IMG/VR virus record: IMGVR_UViG_3300027816_000052
Span: 62,001-126,000 of that record
DNA length: 64,000 nucleotides
Direction: 5' to 3' (one strand)
In this document: in pieces, positions 32,947-46,547 of the stretch
Numbering within the stretch: the stretch's first letter is position 1
Layout: every line of letters begins with the position of its first letter
Notes under the pieces: generated by a model
Told to the model about the DNA's origin: nothing
Databases searched by the model: none
The model's input: only the letters and a program-made list of their open reading frames with translations
Translations under genes and position numbers: made by a program

Positions 32947-34812
32947 ATGGCACAACAAAATATAAATCAACACGTTTTTGATAAATTTTATTTATCGCCA
33001 ATTAATGGAAATATGGATTTAAGTTTAGCGACAAATAATAATTATAATGAAGAGATTATATTTTCAAATGAAGTAATTGCATATCTTGATGGTAATAGAC
33101 TTCCATTACAATTCGATATTAATGATTTGGATTCTAACCCAGAATATACATTAATTTATAAACAATATAATCCAAATAATGTGTTATTATCAACAAATTA
33201 TTGGAATCCAAATAATTTGGTTTTAACTTGTTCTACCATGTTTAACTTATGTGATATTGGTTTAACTGGAACAGATAATGGTTTGGTTGACCAAATGACC
33301 GGAGAAACAATAACCGTAACAAATGGTTTATTGCCGGATGTTGATAAATTTAATAGGTTAATGTTTGACAGAAGAATGAAATTGTTTCAGGTAACAGGAT
33401 ATACTAGTTCACGAAATGAAAGATTTTCTGGCTATTCTGCGACAACATTATATGAGGTGGTTTCAAAGACAGGTACAACTGAAGGAGTTTATCATGAGCT
33501 TTATGGTGGTTTCTATCAAGGATTTTATAAACTATTTGGTTATGATTATCAAACAATGCCAACTAGAATGCCTAAAGGATGGACGGTTGAGTTGATGTTA
33601 AAACCTCGACTATACCCCGAATATTTTCCATCTAGTGGGGAAACAACTCTCAATGGGTATTATCCTGAAAATAGTAATATGTTTTTTTATATGGGGACTA
33701 GAGCAGAAAATAAATATTATCATTATGCGGATGGTTCTCCTGTGTCAGATTCCGGGTATACTAGAGCAACATCTGGTTTAACTTGTTTAAAAACCTGTGC
33801 TTGCTCAAATACTGCGGTAACAAATTCTGATTGTATTGAAGTTTATCCACCATCAGCGGTAACTGTTGACCATTCTTATGGTGGTTGTGGTTACTATAAT
33901 GAAGTTGTTTTAGAACCGGAATTAGACCCCGCATGGGATAGTATATCAAATGCAATTTCGCTGAAGTTTTGTGGCAATTTATCAAATCCTAAACTCGGTG
34001 TTAAGGTATTAAGGTTCGTTGGGGATTGTGTTGTTACCGGAAGTTGTGAAACTACTGGTACTACATATACAACAGGATACACCGTTACAGAATATTGTTC
34101 CCCAAATGGAATTTATGATATTTGTCCATCGGGTAGTTCTTTTGTACAGGTAGAACATTGGGTACAAATTGATGTTGTCTTTGAAAGGAATGCTTGGATG
34201 GATGAATGTGATTTAATTTATAAAGGAGGATTGGGTTCAATAACAAAATTTGAATATTTAGATTCACTTTTAGATAATTCTGTAGCGTTGGTTTCACCAC
34301 CTATAACTCATCAACAAACAACCCCAGAACAAATAGAAATTGTAAAGTTAAATGAAGAATGGTTGCTTGAGAAGAAGTATAGAATGGGAACCTTAAAGTT
34401 TTATGTAAATGGTAAATTATTCTACACAATAGAAGATTTTGAAGAAATAATCCCAAGAGGTGAAAATACTAGGAAAGAAAGACAAATCGGTGTACCGTTT
34501 AATATATCGGTTGGGGGCGGCACTCAAGGATTACACGAAGCATTAATTTTTACTGGGTGTGTAACTGGTTTAACAACAACATATAAACAAGACCCAGAAT
34601 TAGTACCTAACCAAATTTTAAGTGCGACAACATTATCTGGGTTATCAACAAATATTTTAATTGAACCCAATTTTGCGGGTAATTTTGAAGGAGCAATTGC
34701 TCAATTTAGAATGTATATAGAACCATTAAGTGCTGCACAAATCCAACATAATTTTAGAATTTTAAAAGATAAGTTTTTACTATTCGATTATTTTTGCGAT
34801 ACTTGTAATTGA
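32947..34812 (+). CDS. structural protein with LamG/concanavalin A-like fold
   Basis: WTVELMLKP...LKFYVNG...F.GAIAQFRMY..PLSAAQIQHNF. Confidence 0.6.
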   Translation: MAQQNINQHVFDKFYLSPINGNMDLSLATNNNYNEEIIFSNEVIAYLDGNRLPLQFDINDLDSNPEYTLIYKQYNPNNVLLSTNYWNPNNLVLTCSTMFNLCDIGLTGTDNGLVDQMTGETITVTNGLLPDVDKFNRLMFDRRMKLFQVTGYTSSRNERFSGYSATTLYEVVSKTGTTEGVYHELYGGFYQGFYKLFGYDYQTMPTRMPKGWTVELMLKPRLYPEYFPSSGETTLNGYYPENSNMFFYMGTRAENKYYHYADGSPVSDSGYTRATSGLTCLKTCACSNTAVTNSDCIEVYPPSAVTVDHSYGGCGYYNEVVLEPELDPAWDSISNAISLKFCGNLSNPKLGVKVLRFVGDCVVTGSCETTGTTYTTGYTVTEYCSPNGIYDICPSGSSFVQVEHWVQIDVVFERNAWMDECDLIYKGGLGSITKFEYLDSLLDNSVALVSPPITHQQTTPEQIEIVKLNEEWLLEKKYRMGTLKFYVNGKLFYTIEDFEEIIPRGENTRKERQIGVPFNISVGGGTQGLHEALIFTGCVTGLTTTYKQDPELVPNQILSATTLSGLSTNILIEPNFAGNFEGAIAQFRMYIEPLSAAQIQHNFRILKDKFLLFDYFCDTCN

Positions 34813-34825
34813 TATCATTATTAAA

Positions 34826-35008
34826 ATGAGTTTTAACAAAAAAATTATTACTAAAGAAAAATTAATTGAAGCTCTTAATAGTGAGATTTCATTAGAGAAA
34901 TTTTTTTCTGCGGATTCAATAGTTTTTAAAGATGATTTATCTCATTATGCTTTTGGGTTATTTAAAGAAGGATTCTCAAAAGAAGAAATTTTTAAAAAAA
35001 TCTTGTAA
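34826..35008 (+). CDS. hypothetical protein
   Basis: 60-aa ORF. Confidence 0.55.
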   Translation: MSFNKKIITKEKLIEALNSEISLEKFFSADSIVFKDDLSHYAFGLFKEGFSKEEIFKKIL

Positions 35009-35025
35009 ATAGTTGATTACTACGT

Positions 35026-35055
35026 ATTATGAGTTAGTTTTAAATAACTCATAAT
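35026..35055. promoter_or_regulatory. perfect 11-bp inverted repeat (operator or hairpin) just upstream of the GT gene at 35060
   Basis: attatgagtta-gttttaaa-taactcataat, downstream of TTGATT at 35013. Confidence 0.5.
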
Positions 35056-35059
35056 TCAC

Positions 35060-37792
35060 ATGGAAAAAAAACTAAATATTTTAGCACACGCCTCTTTTAT
35101 TGGTAAAACCGGTTATGCTAATCATGCTAAATCATTTTTTTGCGCGTTAAATAAGTATGCTAATGTTAAAGTTAGAAATCTGACAGTAGGTGATAGTTGG
35201 TGTGGATTATCGGAAAAACCTCATGATAAAGAAGAGTATTTTACCGATGAAATGCGTAATATGCTTATACTGCAAACATTATACGAACAAGATAATACAA
35301 GAAAAGATTATCCAATATACGGTTACGATGGGTCTTTCATTCCTGATATTCATATCGTTTTAAATGATGTTAATAACCCATATTTTTATGATAACTATGA
35401 TGGATATCGCATAGCTTATAATGTTTGGGAATCAACGGAATACCCAAAAGATTTTTTTGAAAGATTATTTTATTTTCATGAGGTTTGGGTACCATCTAAA
35501 TGGCAAAAAGATAATTTAATTAAACAAGGTTACCCAAAGGAAAGAATTTCGGTTGTTCCAGAAGGTGTTGACCCTGAAGTTTTTAAACCAACAAATGAAA
35601 TTGATTTATCAGAAAAGTTTACATTTTTACTTTTTGGTAGGTGGGAATATAGAAAATCAACAAGTGAAATAATTAGAGCGTTTAATGAAGAATTTAAAAA
35701 TGAGGATGTTAACTTAGTTGTTTGTGCAAATAATCCATTTGCTAATGATGGGTTTAAAACAACTGAAGAAAGAATAATTGCAAATGGTTTGGAAAATAAA
35801 AATCTTAAAATAGTTAATTTTCCAACTAGAGAAGAATATATTAATTATTTAAAAAATGGTCATGTTTTTATTTCATGTGCTAGAAGTGAGGGGTGGAATC
35901 TACCTTTAATAGAAGCAATGGCTTGTGGTACGCCATCAATTTATTCAAACTGGGGAGCACAACTTGAATTTGCTGATGGATTAGGAATTCCTGTTAAAGT
36001 TACTGATTTTGTTTCAGCTAAAAACCAAGATAATTCATTTGTTGGCGATTATATAGAACCAGATTTTAACGATTTGAAATTAAAAATGAGAATGGTCTAT
36101 AATGATTATAAATCATTTAAAGAAAATGCTTTATTAGAATCTGAAACAATTCACAGAAATTTTAATTGGGATTTGGTGGCTAAAAATGCTAATAATATTT
36201 TACAAAAAAAGGTAAATGACTTTGTTTTTGTTACTACCGGTAACGAAAATTATATGCCTCTTATTGAATGTTTAGTTAAGTCTTTAAATGAGTTTTCAAA
36301 ATTTAAAATTATTGTTTATGGGATAAATTGTGATGTACCATTTGATTATCCAAATTTAATAAAAAGAAGATTAAATATTGAAGAATACTCAGAACATGAT
36401 AGGTGGTTTTGGAAGCAATACGCATGTATTGAGTCAATTAACGAATCATTTGAAAATTTTGTTTGGGTTGATGGGGACGTTGTTGCAAATTTTAATATTG
36501 ATAATATAATCAATTATTTCCCTTATGTTGGGAATTATCCGCTATCTGACATACACAGACAAAAAGAATTCTATGGATTTTTTTATGAAAATGGTGTTAA
36601 ATATGAGCAACTATTTAATGAAAATCTTAGTAAATACTTAAATGTTACACCACATTTACCATTTATGCACGTTTGTCTTTTCATTTACAATAAAACCTGC
36701 AAATGGTTTTTTGATGAGATTATAAACCTCTATAAATCAACAGATTTAAATAAATATAGGCATTTATTCTTATGGAATGATGAAGGTGCTGATAATGCAA
36801 TTAGATCGAAGTTTAATTTAAAAAACCATTTACCGTTATCTAATTTTGATGTTTCATCATATGATGGCGAATCATATGAGTTTATTAATAACCAACTATC
36901 TGATTTTTATACATTTTGGGAGAAAGATGGTCCATATAATTTTAATAAAATTTATGGACTTCAATATATTCCTGAAAATAAAAAAGATATTATCTACTTC
37001 CACGGTAACAAAAATGTTGACGCAGCAAATAAAATGATTGATTTTATTAAAATAAAAAGAGACAATTCTTTTTACGAATCAAATAATTTTTATACTTCAA
37101 AAAATGTAATAACAGATTTTAGTGATATAAAAAATATTGAGGGCGGAACTATTTGGGTTGCTGAAAATTACGGTTGGTCACACGCAATATATCATGAAAT
37201 TTATAACTTACAGGATTACTATTTAAGTAGAAAAAAACAAATAAATGATGGGGATATTGTTGTTGATTTAGGAGGTAATATTGGTATCTTCAATAGATGG
37301 GCTTATTCACAAGGAGCGTCTAAAGTTATCTCATTTGAACCAGATAGAAGATATTTTGAATTATTGAAGAAAAACACAAGTCCTAATTCAATTCTTTTTA
37401 ATGCGGCGATGTCTGATAGGATTGGGGAGTTGAGTCTATTTGAGAGCGACCATTTGGGTGGTTCAAATATATTTGGTGTGCCTAGTAACACAAAAAATTA
37501 CAAGGTCCGGACTTATACATTAGATTTTTTATTTGATACAGATTTAATTACTCACATTGACTTTTTAAAGGTTGACGTTGAGGGTGCAGAACATCTAATT
37601 TTTAAAGGAATTAGCGATAACAATTTATCTAAAGTTAAAACTATTTCAATGGAATATCATCACTCACATTTTAATTTTGATGAAAAATTACGTGATGATT
37701 TTATTAATAGATTTGTTAGTCTTGGCTTCAATTCTTATCTTTTATTTATGGGGACAAATAATGCATTACAAATGATATATTTTTATAGATAA
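35060..37792 (+). CDS. GT4 glycosyltransferase + GT-A domain + FkbM methyltransferase fusion
   Basis: TGYA.H..., WES, GRWEYRK, SEGWNLPLIEAMACGTP; middle WVDGD, YFHG; C-terminus DLGGNIG..FEP..LKVDVEGAE. Confidence 0.88.
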   Translation: MEKKLNILAHASFIGKTGYANHAKSFFCALNKYANVKVRNLTVGDSWCGLSEKPHDKEEYFTDEMRNMLILQTLYEQDNTRKDYPIYGYDGSFIPDIHIVLNDVNNPYFYDNYDGYRIAYNVWESTEYPKDFFERLFYFHEVWVPSKWQKDNLIKQGYPKERISVVPEGVDPEVFKPTNEIDLSEKFTFLLFGRWEYRKSTSEIIRAFNEEFKNEDVNLVVCANNPFANDGFKTTEERIIANGLENKNLKIVNFPTREEYINYLKNGHVFISCARSEGWNLPLIEAMACGTPSIYSNWGAQLEFADGLGIPVKVTDFVSAKNQDNSFVGDYIEPDFNDLKLKMRMVYNDYKSFKENALLESETIHRNFNWDLVAKNANNILQKKVNDFVFVTTGNENYMPLIECLVKSLNEFSKFKIIVYGINCDVPFDYPNLIKRRLNIEEYSEHDRWFWKQYACIESINESFENFVWVDGDVVANFNIDNIINYFPYVGNYPLSDIHRQKEFYGFFYENGVKYEQLFNENLSKYLNVTPHLPFMHVCLFIYNKTCKWFFDEIINLYKSTDLNKYRHLFLWNDEGADNAIRSKFNLKNHLPLSNFDVSSYDGESYEFINNQLSDFYTFWEKDGPYNFNKIYGLQYIPENKKDIIYFHGNKNVDAANKMIDFIKIKRDNSFYESNNFYTSKNVITDFSDIKNIEGGTIWVAENYGWSHAIYHEIYNLQDYYLSRKKQINDGDIVVDLGGNIGIFNRWAYSQGASKVISFEPDRRYFELLKKNTSPNSILFNAAMSDRIGELSLFESDHLGGSNIFGVPSNTKNYKVRTYTLDFLFDTDLITHIDFLKVDVEGAEHLIFKGISDNNLSKVKTISMEYHHSHFNFDEKLRDDFINRFVSLGFNSYLLFMGTNNALQMIYFYR

Positions 37793-40527
37793 TGGCGCAC
37801 GTAGAACAAAGAAATTTTTGCATTAAAGTAAAAGAAAAGTTTCCTGATTTTTTTAAAAATAAAAAAGTCTTGGATATTGGTTCATTAGACATAAATGGTA
37901 GTAATCGAGATTTATTTGAGGATTGTGATTATATAGGATTAGACGTTGGTGAAGGTAGGAATGTCGATGTGGTATCTGTTGGTCATTTATATGATGCTCC
38001 AGATAGTTTTTTCGATACGATTATTTCTACTGAAGTCTTTGAACACGATATGTTCTATGAGGAAACCGTTAAAAACATAATGAGAATGTTAAAACCCGGT
38101 GGCTTATTTGTATTTACCTGTGCCGCACCGGGAAGACCGGAGCATGGAACTAGACGATGTGGTGAAGAGTGCGCTCCATTATTGATACAAATTTCAGAAG
38201 AATGGGCTGACTATTATAAAAATTTAGATAGCCATGATTTTAAAATTATACCAAGTTTTAATGAAACATTTCCCGATGGTTATTTTGAATTAAATAATTT
38301 ATATCTAGAAATACCATCTGATTTGTATTTTTATGGTATAAAAGGTGGTGAGAAATATTACATAAATAATATTGTTACAGAATACAATAAACCAGAATTT
38401 AATGAACATATTTTTGTTATTGATTCTTGGCCTGACGATGAAAAAAAAGAAAATGATTTAGTTAATTTAATTAAAAAATTAAAATCATTTAATATTCAAA
38501 TTTTACTAGCCGGACATTATCCGATTAAAGAAGAAATACAAAAAATGGTGGATTATTATATTTTTGATAAAAATAATCCATTATTACTTTCTAGTGAATT
38601 TAATTCGTTTGATGTTGGTAGTGGAAGATGGGCAGAAACTTCAGAATATAGAATAGATATGTCAATGGTCTTTCATCATGATTATGCAATATGGGAAACA
38701 ATGAGAACGGCATTTAATTTTTGTAAATTTTTAAATAAAAAATACATTCATTTCTTAGAATATGATAATAATCCAAATGTTTTCCAATATAAACAATGTT
38801 TTATTGAACAAATAATTAATCATGATGCAATCATATACGAATATAGTTTAGATTCAGCAAAAAATTTAAATCCATATTGTGCCACTTTTATTTTTTCAAT
38901 AAAAACAGATATCGCATTAAAATTAATTTCACAAATAAATTCAAAAACGGAATATTTTACTAACAAACCTAAAGGTTGGCAGTTAGAGCGAGTTTTTTTA
39001 GAAAAATTAACTAATGTTACAAATAACATAAAACTTTCAGAATATATTGCAAATGAAAATGAATTAAATACTCAAGCAGTTTGGAATAGAGATGGTATAG
39101 TTAAAAATGGTGCAATATTTCAATCCTACTTAGCTGTTGATTATAAAAATCATTTATATTTAGAACTAATATCTGGTTTTGATAGTAAAAAAGCTGATAA
39201 AGATTATATTATAGAGATTGAGTATCTTTCAACAAGAAAGTTTATAACATTAAAAAAAGATAACATGATGATTGTTCCGTTAGGGGAATATCACGTTGGA
39301 GGTTATGTTAAATTATATTATGAGGGGGTTTTAATTTTTAATGAATTTCTATATAAATCAGCAAAAAAATTTAGAGAAGTGAGTTCAATTATTTTAAAAA
39401 ATGAGTCACTACCTGAACCCAAAATTAATATTAATTTTATTGATGGGGCGTTTGTTGAAATATTAGATGATATTGATTCTAAATATGATGTTGAATTTAT
39501 AGATAAGCAAACAAATCGTGTAATTTTTGGAACAACAATAAAAAATAATTGTTGGGCTAAATGTAATAAAAAATATTTTATTGATTGGAAAATCAAAATT
39601 AAATCACAATACGGTAAAGAATATACATATGACTTAGATTTAAAAAATCAAAATGTTTTGATTTCATTTGAGTCTAAATCCTTAGGGGATACTTTAGCGT
39701 GGATGTCATATGTTGAGGCTTTCGGTATCAAACACGGATGTAATGTTATCTGCTCAACATTCCACAATGATTTATTTGTAAACCAATATAAAAATATTAA
39801 ATTCGTTAAACCGGGAAATACAGCTAGTAATATAATTGCTCTTTATAGATTAGGTGTTTTTTATAATGGAAATAATTTTAATGAGGAATATCATTTAATG
39901 GACCCAAAAAAGGAACCACTATTAAAAATAGCTTCCGACATATTGGGATTAGAATATAAAGAATTAAAACCAAGTCTTCCCGTTTTATCAATAAAAAAAG
40001 AAAAACGAGTTTGTATAGCAACACATTCAACCGCACAATGCAAGTATTGGAATAACCCAACTGGTTGGCAAGAAGTTGTTGATTTCTTGATAGAAAATGG
40101 ATATGAAGTTAGATTGTTGTCAATTGAAGAAGATGGATATATGGGTAATAAAAATCCTATCGGTGTTACACAACAACCAAAAGGTGAAATAACAGATGTC
40201 CTTAAAACATTACAGGAATCGGAATTTTTTATTGGTATTAGTAGCGGACTAAGCTGGTTAGCTTGGGCATCTGGAATTAAAACAATACTAATATCCGGTT
40301 TTACTGATAAATATTTAGAACCATTAAATGATATTTATCGGGTAATAAATAAAGAAGTATGTCATGGGTGTTGGCACACACATAAATTTGACGCTGGCGA
40401 CTGGAATTGGTGTCCAATACACAAAGGAACATCTAGAGAATTTGAATGCTCTAAATCAATAACCGCAGACCAAGTTATTAATTTAATTAAAAATGAAAAT
40501 TTATGTTCAAATTGCGTCATATCGTGA
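37792..40527 (+). CDS. methyltransferase + Aah/TibC-type (BAHT) protein O-heptosyltransferase fusion
   Basis: N-terminus VLDIGSLDING..TEVFEHD; C-terminus KYFIDW...SLGDTLAW...STAQCKYWNNPTGW...FIGISSGLSWLAW...LISGF...CHGCW...WCP.HKGT.R.FECSK (iron-finger Cys). Confidence 0.85.
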   Translation: MAHVEQRNFCIKVKEKFPDFFKNKKVLDIGSLDINGSNRDLFEDCDYIGLDVGEGRNVDVVSVGHLYDAPDSFFDTIISTEVFEHDMFYEETVKNIMRMLKPGGLFVFTCAAPGRPEHGTRRCGEECAPLLIQISEEWADYYKNLDSHDFKIIPSFNETFPDGYFELNNLYLEIPSDLYFYGIKGGEKYYINNIVTEYNKPEFNEHIFVIDSWPDDEKKENDLVNLIKKLKSFNIQILLAGHYPIKEEIQKMVDYYIFDKNNPLLLSSEFNSFDVGSGRWAETSEYRIDMSMVFHHDYAIWETMRTAFNFCKFLNKKYIHFLEYDNNPNVFQYKQCFIEQIINHDAIIYEYSLDSAKNLNPYCATFIFSIKTDIALKLISQINSKTEYFTNKPKGWQLERVFLEKLTNVTNNIKLSEYIANENELNTQAVWNRDGIVKNGAIFQSYLAVDYKNHLYLELISGFDSKKADKDYIIEIEYLSTRKFITLKKDNMMIVPLGEYHVGGYVKLYYEGVLIFNEFLYKSAKKFREVSSIILKNESLPEPKININFIDGAFVEILDDIDSKYDVEFIDKQTNRVIFGTTIKNNCWAKCNKKYFIDWKIKIKSQYGKEYTYDLDLKNQNVLISFESKSLGDTLAWMSYVEAFGIKHGCNVICSTFHNDLFVNQYKNIKFVKPGNTASNIIALYRLGVFYNGNNFNEEYHLMDPKKEPLLKIASDILGLEYKELKPSLPVLSIKKEKRVCIATHSTAQCKYWNNPTGWQEVVDFLIENGYEVRLLSIEEDGYMGNKNPIGVTQQPKGEITDVLKTLQESEFFIGISSGLSWLAWASGIKTILISGFTDKYLEPLNDIYRVINKEVCHGCWHTHKFDAGDWNWCPIHKGTSREFECSKSITADQVINLIKNENLCSNCVIS

Positions 40528-41740
40528 CCCGCAATTAATTCCGACAATTAAAAATTTATTAGAAAATTCAAAAAATCCAGAAAATTTAAGGATTGGTATT
40601 GCTAGACAATATCATCCAGAAGATAAATTTGATGATTTGTCTGAGTATGATAACGATGAACGATTTAGAATTTTAAATATTCCATATGAAGAATCTTTAG
40701 GTGTTTGTTGGGCTAGACATTTGATTCAACAACTTTATGATAATGAGGAATATACCCTTCAGATAGATTCTCACATGAGATTTGAAAAAGATTGGGATGA
40801 AACATTAATTAATATGCTTGAAGGATTAAAAAAAGATGGTTATAGAAAGCCACTATTAACAGCATATGTACCATCATTTAATCCTGAAAATGACCCTAAT
40901 GATAGAGTCAAGGTTCCTTGGCGGATGGTTTTTGATAAGTTTACACCAGAAGGTGTTGTATTTTTTCTTCCTGAGGTTATCCAAAATTGGAAACAATTAG
41001 ATAAACCAATTCCTGCTAGATTTTACTCTGCACATTTTTGTTTTACAATTGGACAATTTGCGTTAGAGGCGCAACATGACCCCGAATATTATTTTCATGG
41101 TGAAGAGATTTCTATCGCAGCAAGAGCATATACACATGGATATGATTTATTTCATCCGCATAAGGTCATTCTTTGGCATGAATATACTAGAAAGGGTAGA
41201 ACAAAGCATTGGGACGATATACAAAATTGGTCAGCTTTAAACAAAGAATCACACAGAAGAAATAGAGTATTATTTGGTATGGATAATGAAATTCAAAACA
41301 TTGATTTTGGTAGATTTGGTTTTGGTAAATTAAGAACTTTAAGAGATTATGAAAAATATGTTGGTTTATTATTTGAAAAACGTGCTATACAGCAATACAC
41401 GTTAGATAAAAAATATGCACCAAATCCATATACATTTAATGATGAAAATGAGTGGAAAAATAGTTTTGCATCAAAGTTTAAATATGATATAAAAGTTCCA
41501 AAAATTAATTTACAAGAAAAAGATTATGAGTTTTTTGCTATTGCTTTTCACGACAAAAAAGATGAAACGTTATACAGAAAAGATGCAGACAAGATTGAAA
41601 TTTTTAATTCTTTTAAGACAGTTGATGACTTTATAACAATTAGGAGAGAATTTAATAATGAACAAATTCCGGCGTATTGGGTTGTTTGGCCTTATAGTAA
41701 AACAAAAGGATGGTGCGATAGATTGGTAGGTGAAATTTAA
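40493..41740 (+). CDS. Skp1-type (GT60/Gnt1-like) protein GlcNAc transferase
   Basis: IYVQIASYRD, G.CWAR...Q......LQIDSHMRF..DWD, F.GEEI..AARAYT.GYD, WHEY. Confidence 0.85.
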   Translation: MKIYVQIASYRDPQLIPTIKNLLENSKNPENLRIGIARQYHPEDKFDDLSEYDNDERFRILNIPYEESLGVCWARHLIQQLYDNEEYTLQIDSHMRFEKDWDETLINMLEGLKKDGYRKPLLTAYVPSFNPENDPNDRVKVPWRMVFDKFTPEGVVFFLPEVIQNWKQLDKPIPARFYSAHFCFTIGQFALEAQHDPEYYFHGEEISIAARAYTHGYDLFHPHKVILWHEYTRKGRTKHWDDIQNWSALNKESHRRNRVLFGMDNEIQNIDFGRFGFGKLRTLRDYEKYVGLLFEKRAIQQYTLDKKYAPNPYTFNDENEWKNSFASKFKYDIKVPKINLQEKDYEFFAIAFHDKKDETLYRKDADKIEIFNSFKTVDDFITIRREFNNEQIPAYWVVWPYSKTKGWCDRLVGEI

Positions 41741-41772
41741 TTATTTGATATATTTATTATTAAAAATAATAA

Positions 41773-42138
41773 ATGGAATTCTTTATTAAAAAAAACGCAA
41801 CACTTCCTGTTTTAAAAATGCAAGTTTTAAATAATGGTAGGCATGAATATAAAACATTTATGAATTTACTTGAAACTGCGACAATTTCATTTACAATGAT
41901 TAATGAAGCTACTGGAATACCAAAAATAGCAAATGCTCCAGCATATATAACAGATAAAATTTTTGAAAATCCTAATGCTGATAGGGAATATTATGTTTAT
42001 TATCTTTTTTCACAGAAAGACACTAATAAGGTAGGACGTTATCAGGGTCAATTTGTACTAGCCTTGAATAACGGGACATTAATTTGTCCAATCAGAGAGG
42101 ATTTATACATAAATATAACGGATAGTACAATTTCATAA
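41773..42138 (+). CDS. BppU-like baseplate/fibre attachment protein
   Basis: FFIKKNATLP.L...F.M......Y.F...DT...G.Y...F. Confidence 0.55.
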   Translation: MEFFIKKNATLPVLKMQVLNNGRHEYKTFMNLLETATISFTMINEATGIPKIANAPAYITDKIFENPNADREYYVYYLFSQKDTNKVGRYQGQFVLALNNGTLICPIREDLYINITDSTIS

Positions 42139-42140
42139 AA

Positions 42141-42641
42141 ATGAATTTTTTTATAAAAAAAAATGCAACACTACCATTTTTGGTATTAAAAATAATTAAA
42201 GGTGAGGTAGATGATTTCTATGAATATTTTGATTCATTATCTTCAACCACAATTAATTTCTCAATGAGAGATACTGAAACAAAAAAATTAAAAATAGTTA
42301 ATGATTCATGTAACATAGAAAAAAATGAAAATGAAGAAAGAGATGAATATTTAATTTATTATCAATTTAAAAATCACCATACCAAATTAATAGGTCGCTA
42401 CGAAGCGGAATTTAATATTCAAGAAAATCAAAAAAAAATAGGTTTACCATTAAAAAATAAACTCTATATTAATGTTGTTGATAGTTTTGCGGCAAATAAT
42501 CTTTCATATAGTTCTACTACAGCAACAATAGTAAGTAATAATTGTTGTGTAACATCTATAACACAAGAAACTTTCTTCTTATTAACAGAAGATAATATAA
42601 TACTTGCAACTGAAGATGGTGAAAATATTCTATGGATATAA
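42141..42641 (+). CDS. BppU-like protein (tandem paralog)
   Basis: Same FFIKKNATLP start; C-terminus LLTEDNIILATEDGENIL. Confidence 0.55.
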   Translation: MNFFIKKNATLPFLVLKIIKGEVDDFYEYFDSLSSTTINFSMRDTETKKLKIVNDSCNIEKNENEERDEYLIYYQFKNHHTKLIGRYEAEFNIQENQKKIGLPLKNKLYINVVDSFAANNLSYSSTTATIVSNNCCVTSITQETFFLLTEDNIILATEDGENILWI

Positions 42642-42662
42642 TATTTATATTTAAAAAAGATT

Positions 42663-43931
42663 ATGGCTAATAAAAAAATTAGTAACTTACCTGAGTATAA
42701 CACACCACAACCAAATGATGTGTTACCAATTGTTAATGTTGCTAATAGCGTAACACAAAAAGTACTATTTTCAGCAATTAGTCAAACAATAACATCAGGA
42801 TTAGTTGATGTTTTTGTGACTGGTGGTACTTATTCAGCTGGAACAGCAACATTTATAAATAATACTGGCGGAACGTTTAGTGTTAGTGGCTTTACCGATA
42901 GTCAAGCAGGTTCCTCAGGAACATCAGGGACAAGTGGCTCATCTGGCTCTAGCGGAACATCAGGGATAAGCGGCTCTTCAGGAAGTTCTGGAACATCTGG
43001 TACAAGTGGTTCATCAGGAAGTTCTGGTACAAGTGGTTCATCTGGTAGTTCAGGAACATCTGGAACAAGTGGTTCATCAGGAAGTTCTGGTACAAGTGGT
43101 TCGTCAGGTTCTTCAGGAACAAGTGGTTCATCTGGTAGTTCAGGAACATCTGGAACAAGTGGTTCATCAGGAAGTTCTGGTACAAGTGGTTCGTCAGGAA
43201 GTTCTGGTACAAGTGGTTCGTCAGGTTCTTCAGGAACAAGTGGTTCATCAGGAAGTTCTGGTTCTTCAGGTACAAGTGGAATAAATGGTTCTTCTGGAAC
43301 ATCAGGAACAAGTGGTTCATCTGGTAGTTCAGGAACATCTGGAACAAGTGGTTCATCAGGAAGTTCTGGTACAAGTGGTTCATCAGGAAATTCTGGTTCT
43401 TCAGGAACAAGTGGTTCATCTGGTAGTTCAGGAACATCAGGAACAAGTGGTTCATCAGGAAGTTCTGGCACAAGTGGTTCGTCAGGTTCTTCAGGAACAA
43501 GTGGTTCATCTGGTAGTTCAGGAACATCTGGAACAAGTGGTTCATCAGGAAGTTCTGGTACAAGTGGTTCGTCAGGTTCTTCTGGTACAAGTGGTTCATC
43601 AGGAAGTTCTGGTTCTTCAGGTACAAGTGGAATAAATGGTTCTTCTGGAACATCTGGTACAAGTGGTTCTTCAGGAAGTTCTGGTACAAGTGGTTCATCA
43701 GGTTCTAGCGGAACATCTGGCACAAGTGGTTCTTCAGGAAGTTCAAGTGTTACTAATTTTCCGGTAACTTTTAATAATTCTGGAAGTGGAAATGCATCTG
43801 GGGTTAATTTTGATGGTTCTGTTGCACGAACTGTTAGTTTTAATACAATAGGTGCAAATAAAGTAATAACCTCTGGTACCGCTGCTCCGACCGGAGGTAA
43901 TGATGGAGACATCTATTTACAATTTACATAA
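42663..43931 (+). CDS. fibre protein with a long Gly-Ser-Ser/Gly-Thr-Ser repeat
   Basis: MANKKISNLP N-terminus; ~280 aa of G-X-X repeats; C-terminus SGTAAPTGGNDGDIYLQ. Confidence 0.75.
   Translation: MANKKISNLPEYNTPQPNDVLPIVNVANSVTQKVLFSAISQTITSGLVDVFVTGGTYSAGTATFINNTGGTFSVSGFTDSQAGSSGTSGTSGSSGSSGTSGISGSSGSSGTSGTSGSSGSSGTSGSSGSSGTSGTSGSSGSSGTSGSSGSSGTSGSSGSSGTSGTSGSSGSSGTSGSSGSSGTSGSSGSSGTSGSSGSSGSSGTSGINGSSGTSGTSGSSGSSGTSGTSGSSGSSGTSGSSGNSGSSGTSGSSGSSGTSGTSGSSGSSGTSGSSGSSGTSGSSGSSGTSGTSGSSGSSGTSGSSGSSGTSGSSGSSGSSGTSGINGSSGTSGTSGSSGSSGTSGSSGSSGTSGTSGSSGSSSVTNFPVTFNNSGSGNASGVNFDGSVARTVSFNTIGANKVITSGTAAPTGGNDGDIYLQFT
42908..43746 (+). repeat. 9-nt (GSS/GTS) tandem repeat with higher-order duplication
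   Basis: ggt tca tca / gga aca agt units; the rare GIN unit recurs 351 nt apart (43271, 43622). Confidence 0.9.
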
Positions 43932-43940
43932 TCGCTCAAT

Positions 43941-44120
43941 ATGATTAAAATAGAAAAAAATACAGAAGTAGAATCAAACATAAACTACATAACTTGTGAA
44001 AGTGGGGAATTTAACGATACCGATTTAGTTAAGTGTAGACTTAAAACCAAACTTTCAGAAAACACCGTTATGTTTCTAGTATCACAAATAAAAAACACAA
44101 CCAATGAAAGTAGCATTTGA
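43941..44120 (+). CDS. small hypothetical protein (59 aa; not in ORF track)
   Basis: Hand translation MIKIEKNTEVESNINYITCESGEF...NESSI*; fills the gap and overlaps the next start. Confidence 0.55.
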   Translation: MIKIEKNTEVESNINYITCESGEFNDTDLVKCRLKTKLSENTVMFLVSQIKNTTNESSI

Positions 44121-46245
44121 ACAGATATTTAATGGGTCGCTAGACCAAGTTGCAATAGGTGGTGCTTATGACGCAACAAAAATAAACAGAGGTAAGCATA
44201 CAGGACAATTCAATCTTGGAGCAAACGCGATTGATAAATTCGTAGGTCCAGCACCTGTTGGTGTTGCTAACTTCGGTCAATCATCATTAGCTATACCCTC
44301 TCAGTTTGTTCATCCAGTCAAAATAACAGACGATTTATTTTGGATTTTTGGTGCGGATGTTGCTAGTGCAGGAGCTACACGTAGAGTCCAATTATGGACT
44401 TTTGTCCCTTCTACCAATACGTACACTTTTATAGGCGCAATTACTTGTACATTTCCTACCGCTACTGCTCATACAGTAAGAGGCATTCGTGTTATTCTTG
44501 AAAACTACACAACAGGTACAGTAGGTGTAAGCGGTACGGCAGTAACAGGTTCGGGAACCACTTGGAATACAGACAGACTTTCTGTAGGTTCACGCATAGG
44601 GTTTGGTTCTACCAATCCTAATAATATTACACAGTGGTTTCAAATATCTGCTATTGGTTCTGATACAACAATCACGTTGACAACTTCAGCAGGAACAGTA
44701 GCATCAGGGACACCTTATGTCATTCAGGATTTAATGATTGTGCAAGCTACAACCAACGCAACTGTTACTAATGGTGGATTGTTTGTGACAAAAGGGTTAC
44801 AATATGGCGATTTCCAAAATCCAGCAATAGTCATTCCTGCTGCTACTACCGTTGATAGGATAAAGGCGGTGTATTGGTTGAAAGATGCGGCCACTATAAC
44901 GAATGACGTTATTGGTGGATGTGCCTTAGGAGATAGAGATAGTTGGACTCAACAATACATCTATTCTACTGAAGGTGCATCAACTACATTAGCGATTTAC
45001 CGATATAACATTAGAGCGGCTCTTACTCCAAGTGCGGGTGCATTTACACTTACTGGGACAGATATTGTTATTACGGGAAACCAAGCAGTAACGGGTAACA
45101 TTTCTCAGTTTAACAATGGTAGAGTGGCTACATTGCAACACGGAGCGGGCAGTGGTGTTCCTTCTTTATACCTATTCACTACTACTCGTATTATTCGTGT
45201 TCCTATTTCAAACATAACAGCAGGTAACACTTCCTTTGTTGCAGATACTATGAGCGAAGTCGTTCCGGGCGGTACTGAAACAAATGTTGCTATTGGCACA
45301 TTTGCTACATTTGATGTTGCTCAATCAATGGATAAACTTGTTATCGCTGGGGGGGCAGGCACAGTATCATTGTACATCACCGATTATTACACAGGGGGTC
45401 AGCAAATGGATAGGAGATCAAATATCATATCAACACAAATGGTTTCATCACTGCGTGACGTTGACAGTCCAATTTATGTTCACCAAATTCCAAGCCAAGC
45501 GCCTTCTGTTTGGGTTGAAGATGGATGGTTATTTTGGATGTATGGTACGACCACAACAACTAATACAAATGCTTTAAGTGTATATCCACTTGCAGCAGAT
45601 TTGGATTTTCAAGCTGAAGTAAACAACAGGATAATACTACCTAAAATAACATTGGGTGCTACACCCGCAAAATTATACAGAGTTGCTACCACCAGTATGG
45701 GAAATGTAGGCGATGTTACAATGGGCGTATCGCCTGATTTTTACAGAATTCAGGTTCGCACATCAGGTATTGATAACAATAGTGGAGGATGGACTGATAT
45801 ATCACAAGACGGTGATTTATCAGGACTTGGCACACCTTCAACTATCCAATTTGCTTTGCAGTTTAGAACTGCGGGTGTAATTATGTTACCTGCAAGGGTT
45901 TTAAGTTTGGCTTTATTGTACGAAACTGACGATGCTCTACCTTCTCAATATCGTTGGAATTACGCCGATTTCAACACTTCTAACGGAACATTTGCGTGGG
46001 TTCAAGCAATTCTTTTTGGAACGACGATTGGAACACACACCATCAACATTTATCGTGCCGATACGGATGCCTTGGTGCTTACACAAGCAAGCACATCAAC
46101 TACCAATGGTACATTCGAGAATTGGGATGGTAGTGCGTGGGTAGCTGGTTTAGGTGCCGATACTGTAGGAAGAAGGAGAAGGTTTGTTCCTTCAGGTTCA
46201 TTACCCGGATCAGTTGATTTATATGCTAAAATAACAATTGCTTAA
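44104..46245 (+). CDS. putative tail fibre / receptor-binding protein
   Basis: Thr/Gly/Ala-rich; YTTGTVGVSGTAVTGSGTTW...IGSDTTITL fibre motif; visibly higher GC than flanks. Confidence 0.6.
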   Translation: MKVAFEQIFNGSLDQVAIGGAYDATKINRGKHTGQFNLGANAIDKFVGPAPVGVANFGQSSLAIPSQFVHPVKITDDLFWIFGADVASAGATRRVQLWTFVPSTNTYTFIGAITCTFPTATAHTVRGIRVILENYTTGTVGVSGTAVTGSGTTWNTDRLSVGSRIGFGSTNPNNITQWFQISAIGSDTTITLTTSAGTVASGTPYVIQDLMIVQATTNATVTNGGLFVTKGLQYGDFQNPAIVIPAATTVDRIKAVYWLKDAATITNDVIGGCALGDRDSWTQQYIYSTEGASTTLAIYRYNIRAALTPSAGAFTLTGTDIVITGNQAVTGNISQFNNGRVATLQHGAGSGVPSLYLFTTTRIIRVPISNITAGNTSFVADTMSEVVPGGTETNVAIGTFATFDVAQSMDKLVIAGGAGTVSLYITDYYTGGQQMDRRSNIISTQMVSSLRDVDSPIYVHQIPSQAPSVWVEDGWLFWMYGTTTTTNTNALSVYPLAADLDFQAEVNNRIILPKITLGATPAKLYRVATTSMGNVGDVTMGVSPDFYRIQVRTSGIDNNSGGWTDISQDGDLSGLGTPSTIQFALQFRTAGVIMLPARVLSLALLYETDDALPSQYRWNYADFNTSNGTFAWVQAILFGTTIGTHTINIYRADTDALVLTQASTSTTNGTFENWDGSAWVAGLGADTVGRRRRFVPSGSLPGSVDLYAKITIA

Positions 46246-46547
46246 TGAGTTTACAATTAACATTCGGTGGAGCAGAGACTGTTCTGGTACGAGATACCGG
46301 AACAGCTAATGCTGTGCAAGGATTTGTTAGTGAAGAAATTGTTGTTTCTAAGAACGTAACTGCACTACCTACCAACTTTTTATTCCAATTATATGAATAC
46401 ATTCAGGCTCCACTAGTATCAATAACGGGTACAGTTGCTTGGATAAAAGTAAGTGGAGTTTGGAAGCAAGCCATAGTATGGTTAAAGGTAGGTGGTGTTT
46501 GGAAGATAACAACCCCGTTTATTAAAGTAAGTGGAGTTTGGAAGTGA
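46245..46547 (+). CDS. fibre-associated protein with three (W/F)xKVxGVWK repeats
   Basis: WIKVSGVWK, WLKVGGVWK, FIKVSGVWK. Confidence 0.55.
   Translation: MSLQLTFGGAETVLVRDTGTANAVQGFVSEEIVVSKNVTALPTNFLFQLYEYIQAPLVSITGTVAWIKVSGVWKQAIVWLKVGGVWKITTPFIKVSGVWK

What the first reader, a model, noticed from the sequence alone, without database searches (positions are those of the whole stretch)
35060..43931. Putative virion protein O-glycosylation cluster: TibC/Aah-type heptosyltransferase and Skp1-type GlcNAc transferase beside a Ser/Thr-repeat fibre
Two enzyme families known to glycosylate proteins (BAHT heptosyltransferases acting on Ser of autotransporter repeats, with all four iron-finger Cys visible; GT60/Gnt1-like GlcNAc transferase) plus a GT4-GT-FkbM fusion lie co-oriented immediately upstream of BppU-like genes and a fibre with ~280 residues of GSS/GTS. 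Inference: the fibre is the acceptor, giving a mucin-like glycosylated and methylated virion appendage.
Basis: partly seen in the sequence, partly recalled or inferred. Interest (0 to 1): 0.72.

Follow-up and report, generated by a model that had tools for sequence, protein, structure and literature searches.

The report
Phage sugar-coating enzymes beside collagen fibre
A freshwater jumbo phage carries a TibC-like protein O-glycosyltransferase, fused to further sugar- and methyl-transferases, next to a collagen-like fibre made of Gly-Ser/Thr-Ser triplets; the same pairing recurs in dozens of other phages, so the fibre is very likely built as a sugar-coated collagen, though nobody has yet shown the sugars.

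Summary
ORFs 35060-43931 (+) encode a GT4 / GT8-like GT-A / FkbM fusion. Next comes a SAM-methyltransferase / GT-A / TibC-like BAHT fusion (TIGR04414 302 bits against a cut-off of 200; TibC E=1e-59; catalytic Asp and all four iron-finger Cys present). A GT60 (PF11397) enzyme, two BppU_N-like small proteins and a 422-aa fibre follow. The "GSS/GTS" stretch of the fibre is 93 uninterrupted collagen triplets, G-[S/T]-S.

- 51 of 80 viral BAHT loci hold such a collagen ORF, and in 25 it is the very next gene.
- Controls gave 0 of 80 tail-sheath loci and 0 of 70 bacterial BAHT loci.
- Of 9 large viral records picked only for the repeat, 6 hold a BAHT, including all 4 that are at least 90% complete.

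So the link between BAHT (with the GT4-GT8-FkbM gene) and the collagen fibre is well supported.

Two corrections apply.
- GT60 is a backbone gene of this phage lineage. In relatives it sits beside Pro/Thr-rich mucin-like proteins (75 of 79 loci), not beside collagen (7 of 79).
- The viral BAHT clade has lost TibC Arg-286, the adenine contact, in all 59 viral loci and all 120 nearest homologues. The donor need not be ADP-heptose.

There is no biochemical proof, and I found no paper describing this module.

The parts
32947..34812 (+). 621-aa protein of unknown function at the head of the co-oriented block
   Evidence: No Pfam, PHROG or NCBIfam hit. Homologues lie upstream of GT60 in 16 of 80 related loci and directly before a G-S/T-S collagen ORF in L086.
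35060..37792 (+). 910-aa three-domain enzyme (P0004): GT4 (about 35291-36208), GT8-like retaining GT-A with an invariant DxD (about 36227-37129), FkbM methyltransferase (about 37139-37726)
   Evidence: Pfam, PHROG and NCBIfam hits. The middle domain was modelled at pLDDT 84.7 and its best folds are glycogenin, UGGT and alpha-3GalT. The same three-domain gene sits upstream of the BAHT gene in the 30-row clade of relatives.
37792..38343 (+). N-terminal class-I SAM methyltransferase domain of P0003
   Evidence: Methyltransf_23 E=4e-8 and phrog_32762 E=1e-49. It is present in only some relatives' BAHT fusions.
38407..39396 (+). Middle part of P0003: a GT-A-fold nucleotide-sugar transferase domain followed by a beta-sandwich
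   Evidence: Model pLDDT 84.6. Foldseek gives GT-A folds (GlcAT-P, LH3 GT domain, PBCV-1 A64R), TMt about 0.5, E about 1e-5. The domain is fused to BAHT in most relatives.
39424..40491 (+). TibC/AAH-like (BAHT, GT9) protein O-glycosyltransferase domain with an iron finger
   Evidence: TibC 4RAP/4RB4 E=1e-59 over the full length. TIGR04414 scores 302 bits against 200. D633, T747, K751, W822 and C857/860/874/886 are conserved; the Arg-286 equivalent is V803.
40493..41740 (+). GT60-family (PF11397) polypeptide GlcNAc-transferase-like enzyme with a QIDSH (DxH) motif
   Evidence: PF11397 258 bits and phrog_24687 E=4e-163. There are 156 viral relatives, and QIDSH is present in 80 of 80.
41773..42138 (+). 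121-aa BppU_N-like small protein, paralogue of the next gene
   Evidence: It matches the 166-aa neighbour at E=1e-18. A homologue lies downstream of GT60 in 71 of 80 loci. An RNA-library contig starts at 41772.
42141..42641 (+). 166-aa BppU_N-like small protein (probable baseplate or fibre adaptor)
   Evidence: BppU_N E=0.005, below the cut-off. Atlas structural look-alikes are BppU_N clusters with TM 0.55-0.80.
42663..43931 (+). 422-aa collagen-like fibre (P0001): N-terminal anchor, 93 G-[S/T]-S triplets (42909-43745), short C-terminal domain. Proposed glycan acceptor.
   Evidence: Collagen Pfam E=1e-41; sequence; position-specific composition. It is the only collagen-like ORF in the 256-kb record. 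The N-terminal motif is shared with non-collagen fibres of relatives. Relatives' collagen proteins end in a Peptidase_S74 chaperone domain.
44104..46245 (+). 713-aa Ser/Thr/Gly/Ala-rich probable fibre or receptor-binding protein (P0002); 40% G+C against 29% around it
   Evidence: Weak tail-fibre PHROGs at E=2e-7. Atlas look-alikes are all viral. G+C profile.
46245..46547 (+). 100-aa protein with C-terminal (V/I)xGVWK repeats, last gene of the block before the DNA polymerase
   Evidence: phrog_6977 minor tail protein E=7e-7; sequence.

Best explanation
This is a virion-fibre glycosylation module of an uncultured freshwater jumbo myovirus.

Shown:
- The genes, domains and conserved catalytic residues are present.
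- The linkage recurs across phages.

Inferred mechanism:
- During late infection the fibre P0001 is made in the host cytoplasm.
- The TibC-like domain of P0003 uses catalytic Asp633, the phosphate-binding Thr747 and Lys751, the sugar-contacting Trp822 and a four-Cys iron finger. It transfers a sugar from a host-supplied nucleotide sugar to Ser hydroxyls of the G-[S/T]-S triplets. The most likely acceptor is the near-invariant Ser in the Y position.
- The fused or adjacent GT-A, GT4 and GT8-like domains extend the glycan or add further sugars. The FkbM and class-I methyltransferase domains O-methylate it.
- The glycosylated chains form a proline-free collagen triple helix. This helix is anchored through the N-terminal domain, probably with the two BppU_N-like proteins, to the tail or baseplate.
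- The sugars probably stabilise and protect the helix, the role hydroxyproline plays in animal collagen.

The first sugar may be a heptose, as in TibC and AAH. However, the viral clade lacks the Arg that reads the adenine of ADP-heptose, so another nucleotide sugar is possible. GT60 is a lineage backbone enzyme whose usual partners are Pro/Thr-rich mucin-like virion proteins. In this phage it may also act on the fibre, but that is the weakest link.
For: Membership of the enzyme.

Forward linkage:
- 51 of 80 viral BAHT loci hold a G-[S/T]-[S/T] collagen ORF, and in 25 it is the next gene, 25-103 bp downstream.
- After dereplication at 70% identity, 23 of 34 clusters hold one. In 12 it is the next gene. 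Of the 28 clusters with at least 3 kb on both sides, 20 hold one.
- The linkage survives different architectures (MTase-GT-A-BAHT, GT-A-BAHT, GT4-BAHT, BAHT-FkbM, BAHT alone) and different positions (downstream, upstream, opposite strand).

Controls: 0 of 80 sheath loci, 0 of 70 bacterial BAHT loci, 7 of 79 GT60 loci.

Reverse linkage: 6 of 9 large records chosen for the repeat hold a BAHT, including 4 of 4 that are at least 90% complete.

Within the lineage, among 24 records: both 3, BAHT only 3, collagen only 1 (at a contig end), neither 17.

Other support:
- Only 4 of 50,697 deposited phage records hold a BAHT-domain match. Of these, the cultured Microcystis phage Mel-JY01 also holds such a collagen ORF, and the repeat matches LR756501 and LR756503.
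- Fibre nature: Peptidase_S74 chaperone ends in relatives, an N-terminal motif shared with other fibres, and tail-fibre PHROGs.
- Y = Ser in 83% of 7,773 triplets from 44 distinct ORFs.
- Precedent: the collagen region of Bacillus BclA is O-glycosylated (PMC12357932).
- RNA libraries from three freshwater samples hold identical contigs over the enzymes and, at about 5-fold higher depth, over the fibre genes from 41772 onward. A DNA run is flat.
Against: - There is no biochemical or proteomic evidence for any glycan.
- Arg-286, whose Ala mutant abolished or largely diminished heptosylation in TibC, is V/I/L/T/A/M in 59 of 59 viral and 120 of 120 nearest sequences.
- No ADP-heptose pathway genes were found in the 85%-complete record.
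- Many G-S/T-S collagen genes have no BAHT within the few kb held (about 110 of 120 short loci). Three records hold a BAHT without the strict repeat pattern.
- Deeper-branching viral BAHTs have no collagen nearby.
- Related loci are not independent samples, so the Fisher p-values overstate the support.
- The complex prediction gave no answer.
Confidence: 0.55

Rival explanations
1. The enzymes glycosylate virion proteins in general, or a different one: P0002, the capsid, the tail tube or Pro/Thr-rich proteins, as in mycobacteriophages. The collagen fibre would be only one target, or a bystander kept nearby because both belong to the structural-gene region.
For: - In some relatives BAHT fusions sit next to Pro/Thr-rich or other Ser/Thr-rich fibre proteins without collagen (L363, L391, L397, L421).
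- Three records hold a BAHT without the strict repeat.
- P0002 is also rich in Ser and Thr.
- Virion glycosylation of the capsid and tail tube is known in mycobacteriophages (cited in PMC12619734).
Against: - Being the very next gene in 25 loci, with co-absence in relatives and genome-level co-occurrence, is more specific than shared membership of a structural module.
- Sheath-centred structural loci hold no collagen at all.
Confidence: 0.17
2. The cluster modifies the host envelope (lipopolysaccharide core, O-antigen or capsule) during infection, to block superinfection or free progeny. The methyltransferases would cap a polysaccharide.
For: GT9, GT4, GT8 and FkbM families are typical of lipopolysaccharide and polysaccharide synthesis. 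The weak NCBIfam hits are to EPS and LPS enzymes. PHROG files these GTs as 'moron / host takeover'.
Against: - The GT9 domain is a full-length TibC/AAH-type protein glycosyltransferase, not WaaC/WaaF (TIGR02193 scores 21 bits against a cut-off of 185).
- There are no membrane, flippase or polymerase genes in the block.
- Envelope modification does not explain the linkage to a fibre gene.
Confidence: 0.08
3. The BAHT-like domain is mainly a scaffold or chaperone that binds and helps assemble the collagen-like trimer. Catalysis would be reduced or lost after the loss of Arg-286.
For: Arg-286 is lost in the whole viral clade. TibC forms a ring that clasps its substrate through the iron finger (PMC4358343).
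Against: The catalytic Asp, the phosphate-binding Thr and Lys, the sugar-contacting Trp and the four Cys are invariant or nearly so in 59 viral and 120 further sequences. That argues for selection on catalysis. The domain is also fused to other transferase domains.
Confidence: 0.05
4. The glycosyltransferases decorate phage DNA (hypermodified bases) to evade restriction.
For: Phage glycosyltransferases often do this (discussed in PMC12619734). The block lies next to the DNA polymerase.
Against: No thymidylate-synthase-like hydroxymethylase was found in the record. BAHT and GT60 are protein-modifying families. DNA modification does not explain the linkage to collagen or mucin-like genes.
Confidence: 0.03

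Closest known systems
TibC / AAH bacterial autotransporter heptosyltransferases (BAHT, TIGR04414; PDB 4RAP, 4RB4)
   Same: - Full-length homology, including the N-terminal barrel, the GT-B catalytic core, the thumb region and the four-Cys iron finger.
- The catalytic Asp, Thr/Lys and Trp are conserved.
- The enzyme is soluble and cytoplasmic and is expected to place many sugars on Ser residues of a long repetitive fibre-like protein encoded next door.
   Different: - The neighbouring substrate candidate is a collagen-like triple-helix repeat of a phage fibre, not a beta-helical autotransporter.
- The enzyme is fused to a methyltransferase and a GT-A domain.
- The adenine-reading Arg-286 is replaced by a hydrophobic residue in the whole viral clade.
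- The viral sequences form their own clade (SH-aLRT 100), at most 39% identical to any of 185,579 species' genomes.
Bacillus exosporium BclA and related collagen-like filaments
   Same: A microbial collagen-like G-X-Thr/Ser repeat that is heavily O-glycosylated with short, partly methylated sugars made by nearby glycosyltransferase genes (PMC12357932). It forms a surface nap or fibre.
   Different: BclA triplets are rich in Pro (GPT) and are modified by rhamnose-based glycans and other enzyme families. BclA is a spore protein, not a virion protein. No BAHT is involved.
Mycobacteriophage virion glycosylation (Che8, Corndog, Myrna; Freeman et al. 2023, cited)
   Same: Phage-encoded glycosyltransferases O-glycosylate structural virion proteins in the host cytoplasm.
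   Different: The targets there are C-terminal tails of the capsid and tail-tube subunits. The enzyme families differ, and there is no collagen repeat and no BAHT.
GT60 polypeptide alpha-GlcNAc transferases of protists (T. cruzi OGNT, Dictyostelium; Skp1 Gnt1)
   Same: The window's 415-aa enzyme is a PF11397 member with the DxH motif. In related phages it lies beside Pro/Thr-rich mucin-like proteins, the substrate type of the protist enzymes (PMC9472816 and PMC8724618).
   Different: The enzyme is viral and prokaryotic in setting and has no Golgi anchor. No solved Gnt1 matches by sequence. In this phage no Pro/Thr-rich gene lies nearby.

Membership tests
BAHT (TibC/AAH, TIGR04414) | Score above the curated equivalog cut-off and end-to-end alignment with TibC | tested here: met
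   302 bits against a cut-off of 200. P0003 545-900 aligns with TibC 24-384 at E=1e-59. The separate Pfam model for the N-terminal barrel is below its cut-off (20.4 against 27).
BAHT (TibC/AAH, TIGR04414) | Catalytic base Asp-110 and ligand residues Thr-226, Lys-230 and Trp-305 | tested here: met
   These correspond to D633, T747, K751 and W822. D, K and W are invariant in 59 distinct viral sequences and T is present in 56 of 59.
BAHT (TibC/AAH, TIGR04414) | Arg-286, which contacts adenine N1 of ADP-heptose | tested here: not met
   V803 in the window. Arg occurs in 0 of 59 viral sequences against 67 of 68 bacterial ones, and in 0 of 120 nearest homologues. The role of the residue is described in PMC4358343.
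BAHT (TibC/AAH, TIGR04414) | Four-Cys 1Fe-0S iron finger (Cys339, 342, 358, 370) | tested here: met
   C857, C860, C874 and C886, conserved in 58 of 59 viral sequences. Iron binding itself was not tested.
BAHT (TibC/AAH, TIGR04414) | Beta-hairpin thumb with a hydrophobic tip, and dodecameric ring assembly | tested here: inconclusive
   The tip Phe265-Val266 aligns with Tyr783-Met784 (Tyr or Phe in 48 of 59, Met in 47 of 59). The oligomeric state cannot be tested here.
BAHT (TibC/AAH, TIGR04414) | Autotransporter substrate encoded alongside; heptosyl transfer to its Ser residues | tested here: not met
   None of the ten ORFs scanned in the block gave an autotransporter-family Pfam hit. The neighbour is a collagen-like fibre, and bacterial BAHT loci hold no collagen repeat (0 of 70). 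Transferase activity and the sugar are not testable with these tools.
GT60 (PF11397 GlcNAc transferase) | Pfam score above the gathering threshold and a DxH metal motif | tested here: met
   258 bits against 21. QIDSH is present in 80 of 80 viral homologues. That DxH is the GT60/GT27 motif is from my own knowledge.
GT60 (PF11397 GlcNAc transferase) | Skp1-type (Gnt1) subfamily, acting on hydroxyproline of Skp1 | tested here: inconclusive
   No match to any solved chain at E<0.1. The repeat has no Pro. The gene's neighbours in relatives are Pro/Thr-rich mucin-like proteins, which fits the mucin-type branch better.
Collagen triple-helix repeat proteins (PF01391) | A long uninterrupted Gly-X-Y run, above the Pfam cut-off | tested here: met
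   93 triplets at residues 83-361; 140.7 bits against 27.2.
Collagen triple-helix repeat proteins (PF01391) | An adjoining trimerisation domain; actual triple-helix formation | tested here: inconclusive
   Relatives end in a Peptidase_S74 chaperone domain. P0001's own 61-aa C-terminus has no match. Folding is not testable here.
BppU_N baseplate upper protein domain (PF10651) | Pfam score above the cut-off | tested here: inconclusive
   16.9 bits against 23.1 for the 166-aa protein and none for the 121-aa one. Structural look-alikes have TM 0.55-0.58 by the query and 0.62-0.80 by the target.
FkbM methyltransferase / GT4 / GT8-like | Family scores above the cut-offs (FkbM, GT4); fold and DxD (GT8-like) | tested here: met
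   FkbM 60 bits against 22.7 and TIGR01444 87 against 37.7. Glycos_transf_1 53.7 against 26.4. The GT8-like assignment is at fold level only (glycogenin E=8e-8, TM about 0.4-0.5) with invariant D87 and D89.

The most novel reading that the evidence does not exclude
A large, purely viral branch of the TibC/AAH family has changed both substrate and donor. It would coat proline-free G-[S/T]-S collagen fibres of aquatic phages with methylated oligosaccharides, and these sugars would take over the helix-stabilising role of hydroxyproline: a sugar-stabilised viral collagen. In the same phage lineage a eukaryote-type GT60 enzyme would put GlcNAc on Pro/Thr-rich mucin-like virion proteins. These phages would then carry two separate mucin-style O-glycosylation systems for their appendages.
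Probability: 0.3. Interest if true: 0.82.

Novelty: new variant of a known kind. Interest (0 to 1): 0.7.

Why it matters
- Protein glycosylation of phage virions is known experimentally from only a few cases, and BAHT enzymes are known only as modifiers of bacterial autotransporter adhesins.
- Here a distinct viral BAHT clade is tied to one substrate type, Gly-Ser/Thr-Ser collagen fibres. It comprises 139 viral contigs found in one pattern-limited scan, and the 120 nearest protein clusters share its Arg-286 replacement.
- If the link holds, many aquatic phages display heavily glycosylated, possibly methylated collagen fibres. That would affect host recognition, particle stability and stickiness in water, and resistance to proteases.
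- It would also give a natural system in which sugars rather than hydroxyproline hold a collagen helix together, and a new enzyme for dense Ser glycosylation of designed collagen-like materials.
- A cultured relative, Microcystis phage Mel-JY01, carries the module, so the idea can be tested directly.

Tried and rejected
- Complex prediction of the BAHT domain with P0001 residues 1-160 gave no answer (score 0.00, partner poorly folded). It is not evidence either way.
- Promoter and terminator scans found no more sites than in shuffled sequence.
- DNA similarity to deposited phages: only the collagen repeat matched two huge-phage records.
- ADP-heptose supply: no SIS/GmhA match, and only a sub-threshold cytidylyltransferase match, in the 256-kb record.
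- In Mel-JY01 the nearby 'cytidylyltransferase-like' protein barely reaches its Pfam cut-off and its neighbours have no hits, so it says nothing about the donor.
- Reverse test at short range: among 120 loci picked by the repeat pattern only about 10 showed a BAHT. Those loci are short, off-centre pieces, so I repeated the test on whole records.
- DNA-modification reading: no thymidylate-synthase-like gene.
- A wider idea, that every viral BAHT sits by a Ser/Thr-rich protein, does not hold for the deep-branching lineages.
- Literature searches for phage BAHT, heptosyltransferase with collagen, glycosylated collagen-like tail fibres and Mel-JY01 found no description of this module. The library covers open-access papers only.
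- I considered a tail-sheath control too narrow on its own, because it samples one syntenic region of one lineage. I therefore added the bacterial BAHT, GT60-locus and whole-record controls.

Full report
**What the window is**

The window is bases 62001-126000 of a 256-kb IMG/VR virus record, estimated 85% complete. G+C is about 29%. It encodes a 1129-aa tail sheath, a family-B DNA polymerase, a helicase and a PhoH-like ATPase. It is therefore an uncultured jumbo myovirus. Near-identical DNA occurs in freshwater metagenomes from 2017 to 2024. Its sheath has more than 600 relatives in IMG/VR, so the lineage is abundant.

**The observation**

Eleven co-oriented ORFs run from 32947 to 46547.

- P0004 (35060-37792) is GT4 plus a middle domain plus FkbM. 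An alignment-based model of the middle domain (pLDDT 84.7) matches glycogenin, UGGT and alpha-3-galactosyltransferase. This makes it a GT8-like retaining GT-A. It has an invariant DxD.
- P0003 (37792-40527) has three parts.
  - A class-I SAM methyltransferase.
  - A GT-A-fold domain with a beta-sandwich (pLDDT 84.6).
  - A C-terminal domain (residues 545-900) that aligns end to end with TibC at E=1e-59. It scores 302 bits on NCBI's equivalog model for Aah/TibC, whose cut-off is 200.
- Using the residue roles given in the TibC structure paper (PMC4358343), I mapped the key positions.
  - The catalytic Asp110 corresponds to D633.
  - Thr226 and Lys230 correspond to T747 and K751.
  - Trp305 corresponds to W822.
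  - Cys339, 342, 358 and 370 correspond to C857, C860, C874 and C886.
- The next gene (40493-41740) is a strong PF11397 (GT60) member.
- Two small paralogous proteins follow (41773-42138 and 42141-42641). Their BppU_N likeness is weak by sequence and moderate by predicted structure.
- P0001 (42663-43931) holds 93 uninterrupted triplets. X is Ser 53 or Thr 36, and Y is Ser in 91 of 93. This is a collagen-type repeat (Pfam E=1e-41), not merely a Ser/Thr-rich stretch.
- P0001 is the only collagen-like ORF in the record, and P0003 holds the only BAHT.

**Is the enzyme-fibre neighbourhood more than chance?**

- Forward test.
  - A scan of IMG/VR with the BAHT domain found 139 relatives, of which 80 loci were kept.
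  - Of these, 51 hold an ORF with at least 10 G-X-Y triplets whose X and Y are at least 60% Ser/Thr.
  - In 25 loci it is the very next gene on the same strand, 25-103 bp downstream. One of the 80 loci is the window's own phage.
- Dereplicated test. Clustering the viral BAHTs at 70% identity gives 34 clusters.
  - 23 hold the collagen ORF.
  - In 12 it is the next gene.
  - Of the 28 clusters with at least 3 kb on both sides, 20 hold it.
- Different arrangements. The pairing persists through different domain architectures and gene orders. That argues against simple inherited synteny.
- Controls. None of 80 tail-sheath-centred loci (1.02 Mb) and none of 70 bacterial BAHT loci (1.26 Mb) hold any collagen repeat. 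Only 7 of 79 GT60-centred loci do.
- Tree. The viral BAHTs form one clade (SH-aLRT 100) apart from 67 of the 68 bacterial ones.
  - The window's 51-row subclade has 41 rows with collagen.
  - Five of the ten without it have under 1 kb of downstream flank.
- Reverse test, short range. I picked loci by a degenerate DNA pattern for ten G-[S/T..]-[S/T..] triplets. In those short pieces BAHT was seldom seen.
- Reverse test, whole records. Of nine large records, 6 hold a BAHT above the cut-off, including all 4 that are at least 90% complete.
- Within the lineage. I took 24 large records chosen through GT60 or the sheath, and so not chosen for either trait.
  - Three hold both traits, three hold a BAHT only, and 17 hold neither.
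  - One holds the repeat only, and there the repeat lies at the very end of a contig.
  - The 17 without either trait include all three complete genomes. Fisher p=0.035.
  - Pooled with the nine records above, p=0.003.
  - These p-values ignore relatedness and are indicative only.
- Deposited phages. Only four of 50,697 records have a BAHT-domain match.
  - One is the cultured Microcystis phage Mel-JY01, which also carries a 202-triplet G-T/S-S ORF just upstream of its fusion enzyme.
  - Two more are the records that matched the window's collagen repeat.

**Is P0001 a virion fibre?**

- The collagen proteins next to BAHT in relatives end in the Peptidase_S74 intramolecular chaperone domain, which is typical of trimeric tail fibres and spikes.
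- P0001's N-terminal motif and its 'TGGTY..G...F.N..GG.F.VSG' unit recur at the start of non-collagen fibre proteins in related phages.
- The downstream genes have weak tail-fibre and minor-tail matches.
- Its location on the particle is inferred, not shown.

**Expression**

Three freshwater metatranscriptome runs hold contigs identical to the window. In the best run the word depth is about 4.5 over the BAHT and GT60 genes. It is about 22-26 from position 41772 onward, one base before the start of the first BppU_N-like gene, through the fibre genes. A DNA run is flat at 14-16. The pattern fits low-level enzyme transcripts and stronger structural transcripts. Contig depths are crude, however, and DNA carry-over cannot be excluded.

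1. GT60.
   - The enzyme has 156 viral relatives at 62-69% identity and is a backbone gene of this lineage.
   - It is followed in 71 of 80 loci by a homologue of the BppU_N-like genes.
   - Only 7 of 79 relatives' loci hold the collagen type and 14 hold a BAHT.
   - In contrast, 75 of 79 hold ORFs with long Pro/Thr(Ser) runs such as TPTPTLTPTNTPT. The rates elsewhere are 13 of 79 BAHT loci, 20 of 80 sheath loci and 3 of 70 bacterial loci.
   - After dereplication, 17 of 29 clusters have such an ORF ending within 200 bp of the GT60 start.
   - GT60 enzymes of protists make GlcNAc-alpha-1-O-Thr on mucin-like proteins (PMC9472816 and PMC8724618). The natural partners of the phage GT60 are therefore probably these mucin-like virion proteins.
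   - The window's phage has none nearby; its only one lies at genome 196790-199141. Whether its GT60 touches the collagen fibre is open.
2. The donor.
   - In TibC, Arg-286 hydrogen-bonds adenine N1 and explains the use of an ADP-sugar. Its Ala mutant abolished or largely diminished heptosylation.
   - It is Arg in 67 of 68 bacterial BAHTs. In 59 of 59 distinct viral sequences, and in 120 of 120 nearest homologues from a 5.8-billion-protein collection, it is Val, Ile, Leu, Thr, Ala or Met.
   - The residues that touch the phosphate and the sugar are kept. The position that sets heptose stereochemistry is Ser, as in AAH.
   - The sugar may still be a heptose, but the nucleotide carrier may differ.
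   - No ADP-heptose pathway gene was found in the record, so the donor would come from the host.

**Most likely mechanism**

The mechanism is inferred from family knowledge plus the linkage. It has four steps.

- The BAHT-like domain puts the first sugar on Ser of the G-[S/T]-S triplets. Y is Ser in 83% of 7,773 triplets from 44 distinct BAHT-linked ORFs.
- The GT-A, GT4 and GT8-like domains extend the glycan.
- FkbM and the class-I methyltransferase methylate it.
- The decorated chains trimerise into a proline-free collagen shaft.

O-glycosylated collagen regions have a microbial precedent in BclA. From my own knowledge, glycosylated Thr in the Y position stabilises the cuticle collagen of the tube worm Riftia. 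Stabilisation and protection of the helix is my preferred function, but it is untested.

**Rivals**

The rivals are: (a) other or several virion proteins as targets; (b) modification of the host envelope; (c) a non-catalytic chaperone role for the BAHT-like domain; (d) DNA glycosylation. They are weighed in their own sections. None explains the specific and repeated pairing with this one repeat type as well as the best explanation does.

**Novelty**

I found no paper describing a phage BAHT, or its pairing with collagen-like fibres. A 2025 paper on a lineage of large aquatic phages notes several core glycosyltransferases but mentions neither heptosyltransferases nor collagen. I rate this a new variant of a known kind: a known enzyme family with a new substrate class, new fusions and an altered donor site, in viruses.

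**Limits**

- All functional statements are inferences from sequence, fold and gene neighbourhood.
- Many loci come from related phages.
- Metagenomic contigs are fragments, so 'absent' often means 'not on this piece'.
- The collagen detector (at least 8 consecutive G-X-Y triplets) and the DNA pattern are strict, and both miss interrupted repeats.

Noticed in passing
window 40493-41740; loci L358-L436 (e.g. L391:8571-9932, L429:4707-6686, L363:13803-15029): The GT60 gene of this phage lineage is almost always flanked by ORFs with long Pro/Thr(Ser) mucin-like runs: 75 of 79 loci, against 13-20 of about 80 in other viral loci. In 17 of 29 dereplicated clusters such an ORF ends within 200 bp of the GT60 start. 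This suggests mucin-type O-GlcNAc glycosylation of virion proteins.
   Followed up: partly
window 40198-40200 (P0003 Val803); alignment of L004-L083 and L285-L353: The viral BAHT clade has replaced TibC Arg-286, the adenine N1 contact, with a hydrophobic residue in every sequence examined (59 loci and 120 database homologues). 67 of 68 bacterial ones keep Arg. This may mean a changed nucleotide-sugar donor.
   Followed up: yes
window 42965-43718: In a DNA run that may be the source sample, one contig skips 752 bases inside the collagen repeat at depth 2.8, against 14.3 for the full form. Several loose ends also fall in the repeat. This is either repeat-length variation in the population or an assembly artefact.
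   Followed up: no
window 44104-46245: The 713-aa protein after the fibre has 40% G+C in a 29% genome. It is rich in Ser, Thr, Gly and Ala and has only viral look-alikes. It may be a recently acquired receptor-binding protein.
   Followed up: partly
window 27774-28907 (- strand): A further stand-alone glycosyltransferase (phrog_7162, E=5e-43) lies 6 kb upstream on the other strand. Its target is unknown.
   Followed up: no
window 57371-60760: The tail sheath is unusually long at 1129 aa, with only its last 200 or so residues matching sheath families. More than 600 relatives in IMG/VR show that this is an abundant aquatic lineage.
   Followed up: partly
window 16609-18429 (- strand): A 606-aa protein combines a PhoH-like ATPase C-terminal half with an N-terminal half that matches 'terminase large subunit', primase and helicase-loader PHROGs. 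No Terminase_6C domain was found anywhere in the record.
   Followed up: no
L076:1-4038 with L076:8759-11077: One deep-branching GT4-BAHT lineage sits near a collagen-like ORF of quite another make-up (X mostly Pro; Y mostly Ile, Gln, Lys or Glu; 4% Ser/Thr). Not every BAHT-linked collagen is of the Ser/Thr type.
   Followed up: no
L285 (3.5-kb contig of a 'Staphylococcaceae' MAG): The only 'bacterial' BAHT that falls inside the viral clade sits on a very short contig of a metagenome bin. It is probably a phage contig binned with a bacterium.
   Followed up: no
L003 (Xanthomonas phage XacN1 213308-223508): In the cultured jumbo phage XacN1 the GT60 homologue (47% identical) lies near a carbamoyltransferase, a GT9-family gene and a 9.9-kb ORF whose visible part contains a Pro/Thr run. 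XacN1 could serve as a second experimental system for the GT60 idea.
   Followed up: no
window 37800-42700 in runs X3-X6, X8-X10, X12-X14: The same phage DNA is held at 27-99% of sampled words by runs labelled 'fungus metagenome' (2019) as well as by freshwater runs from 2017 to 2024. The phage is persistent and widespread, and the sample label is odd.
   Followed up: no
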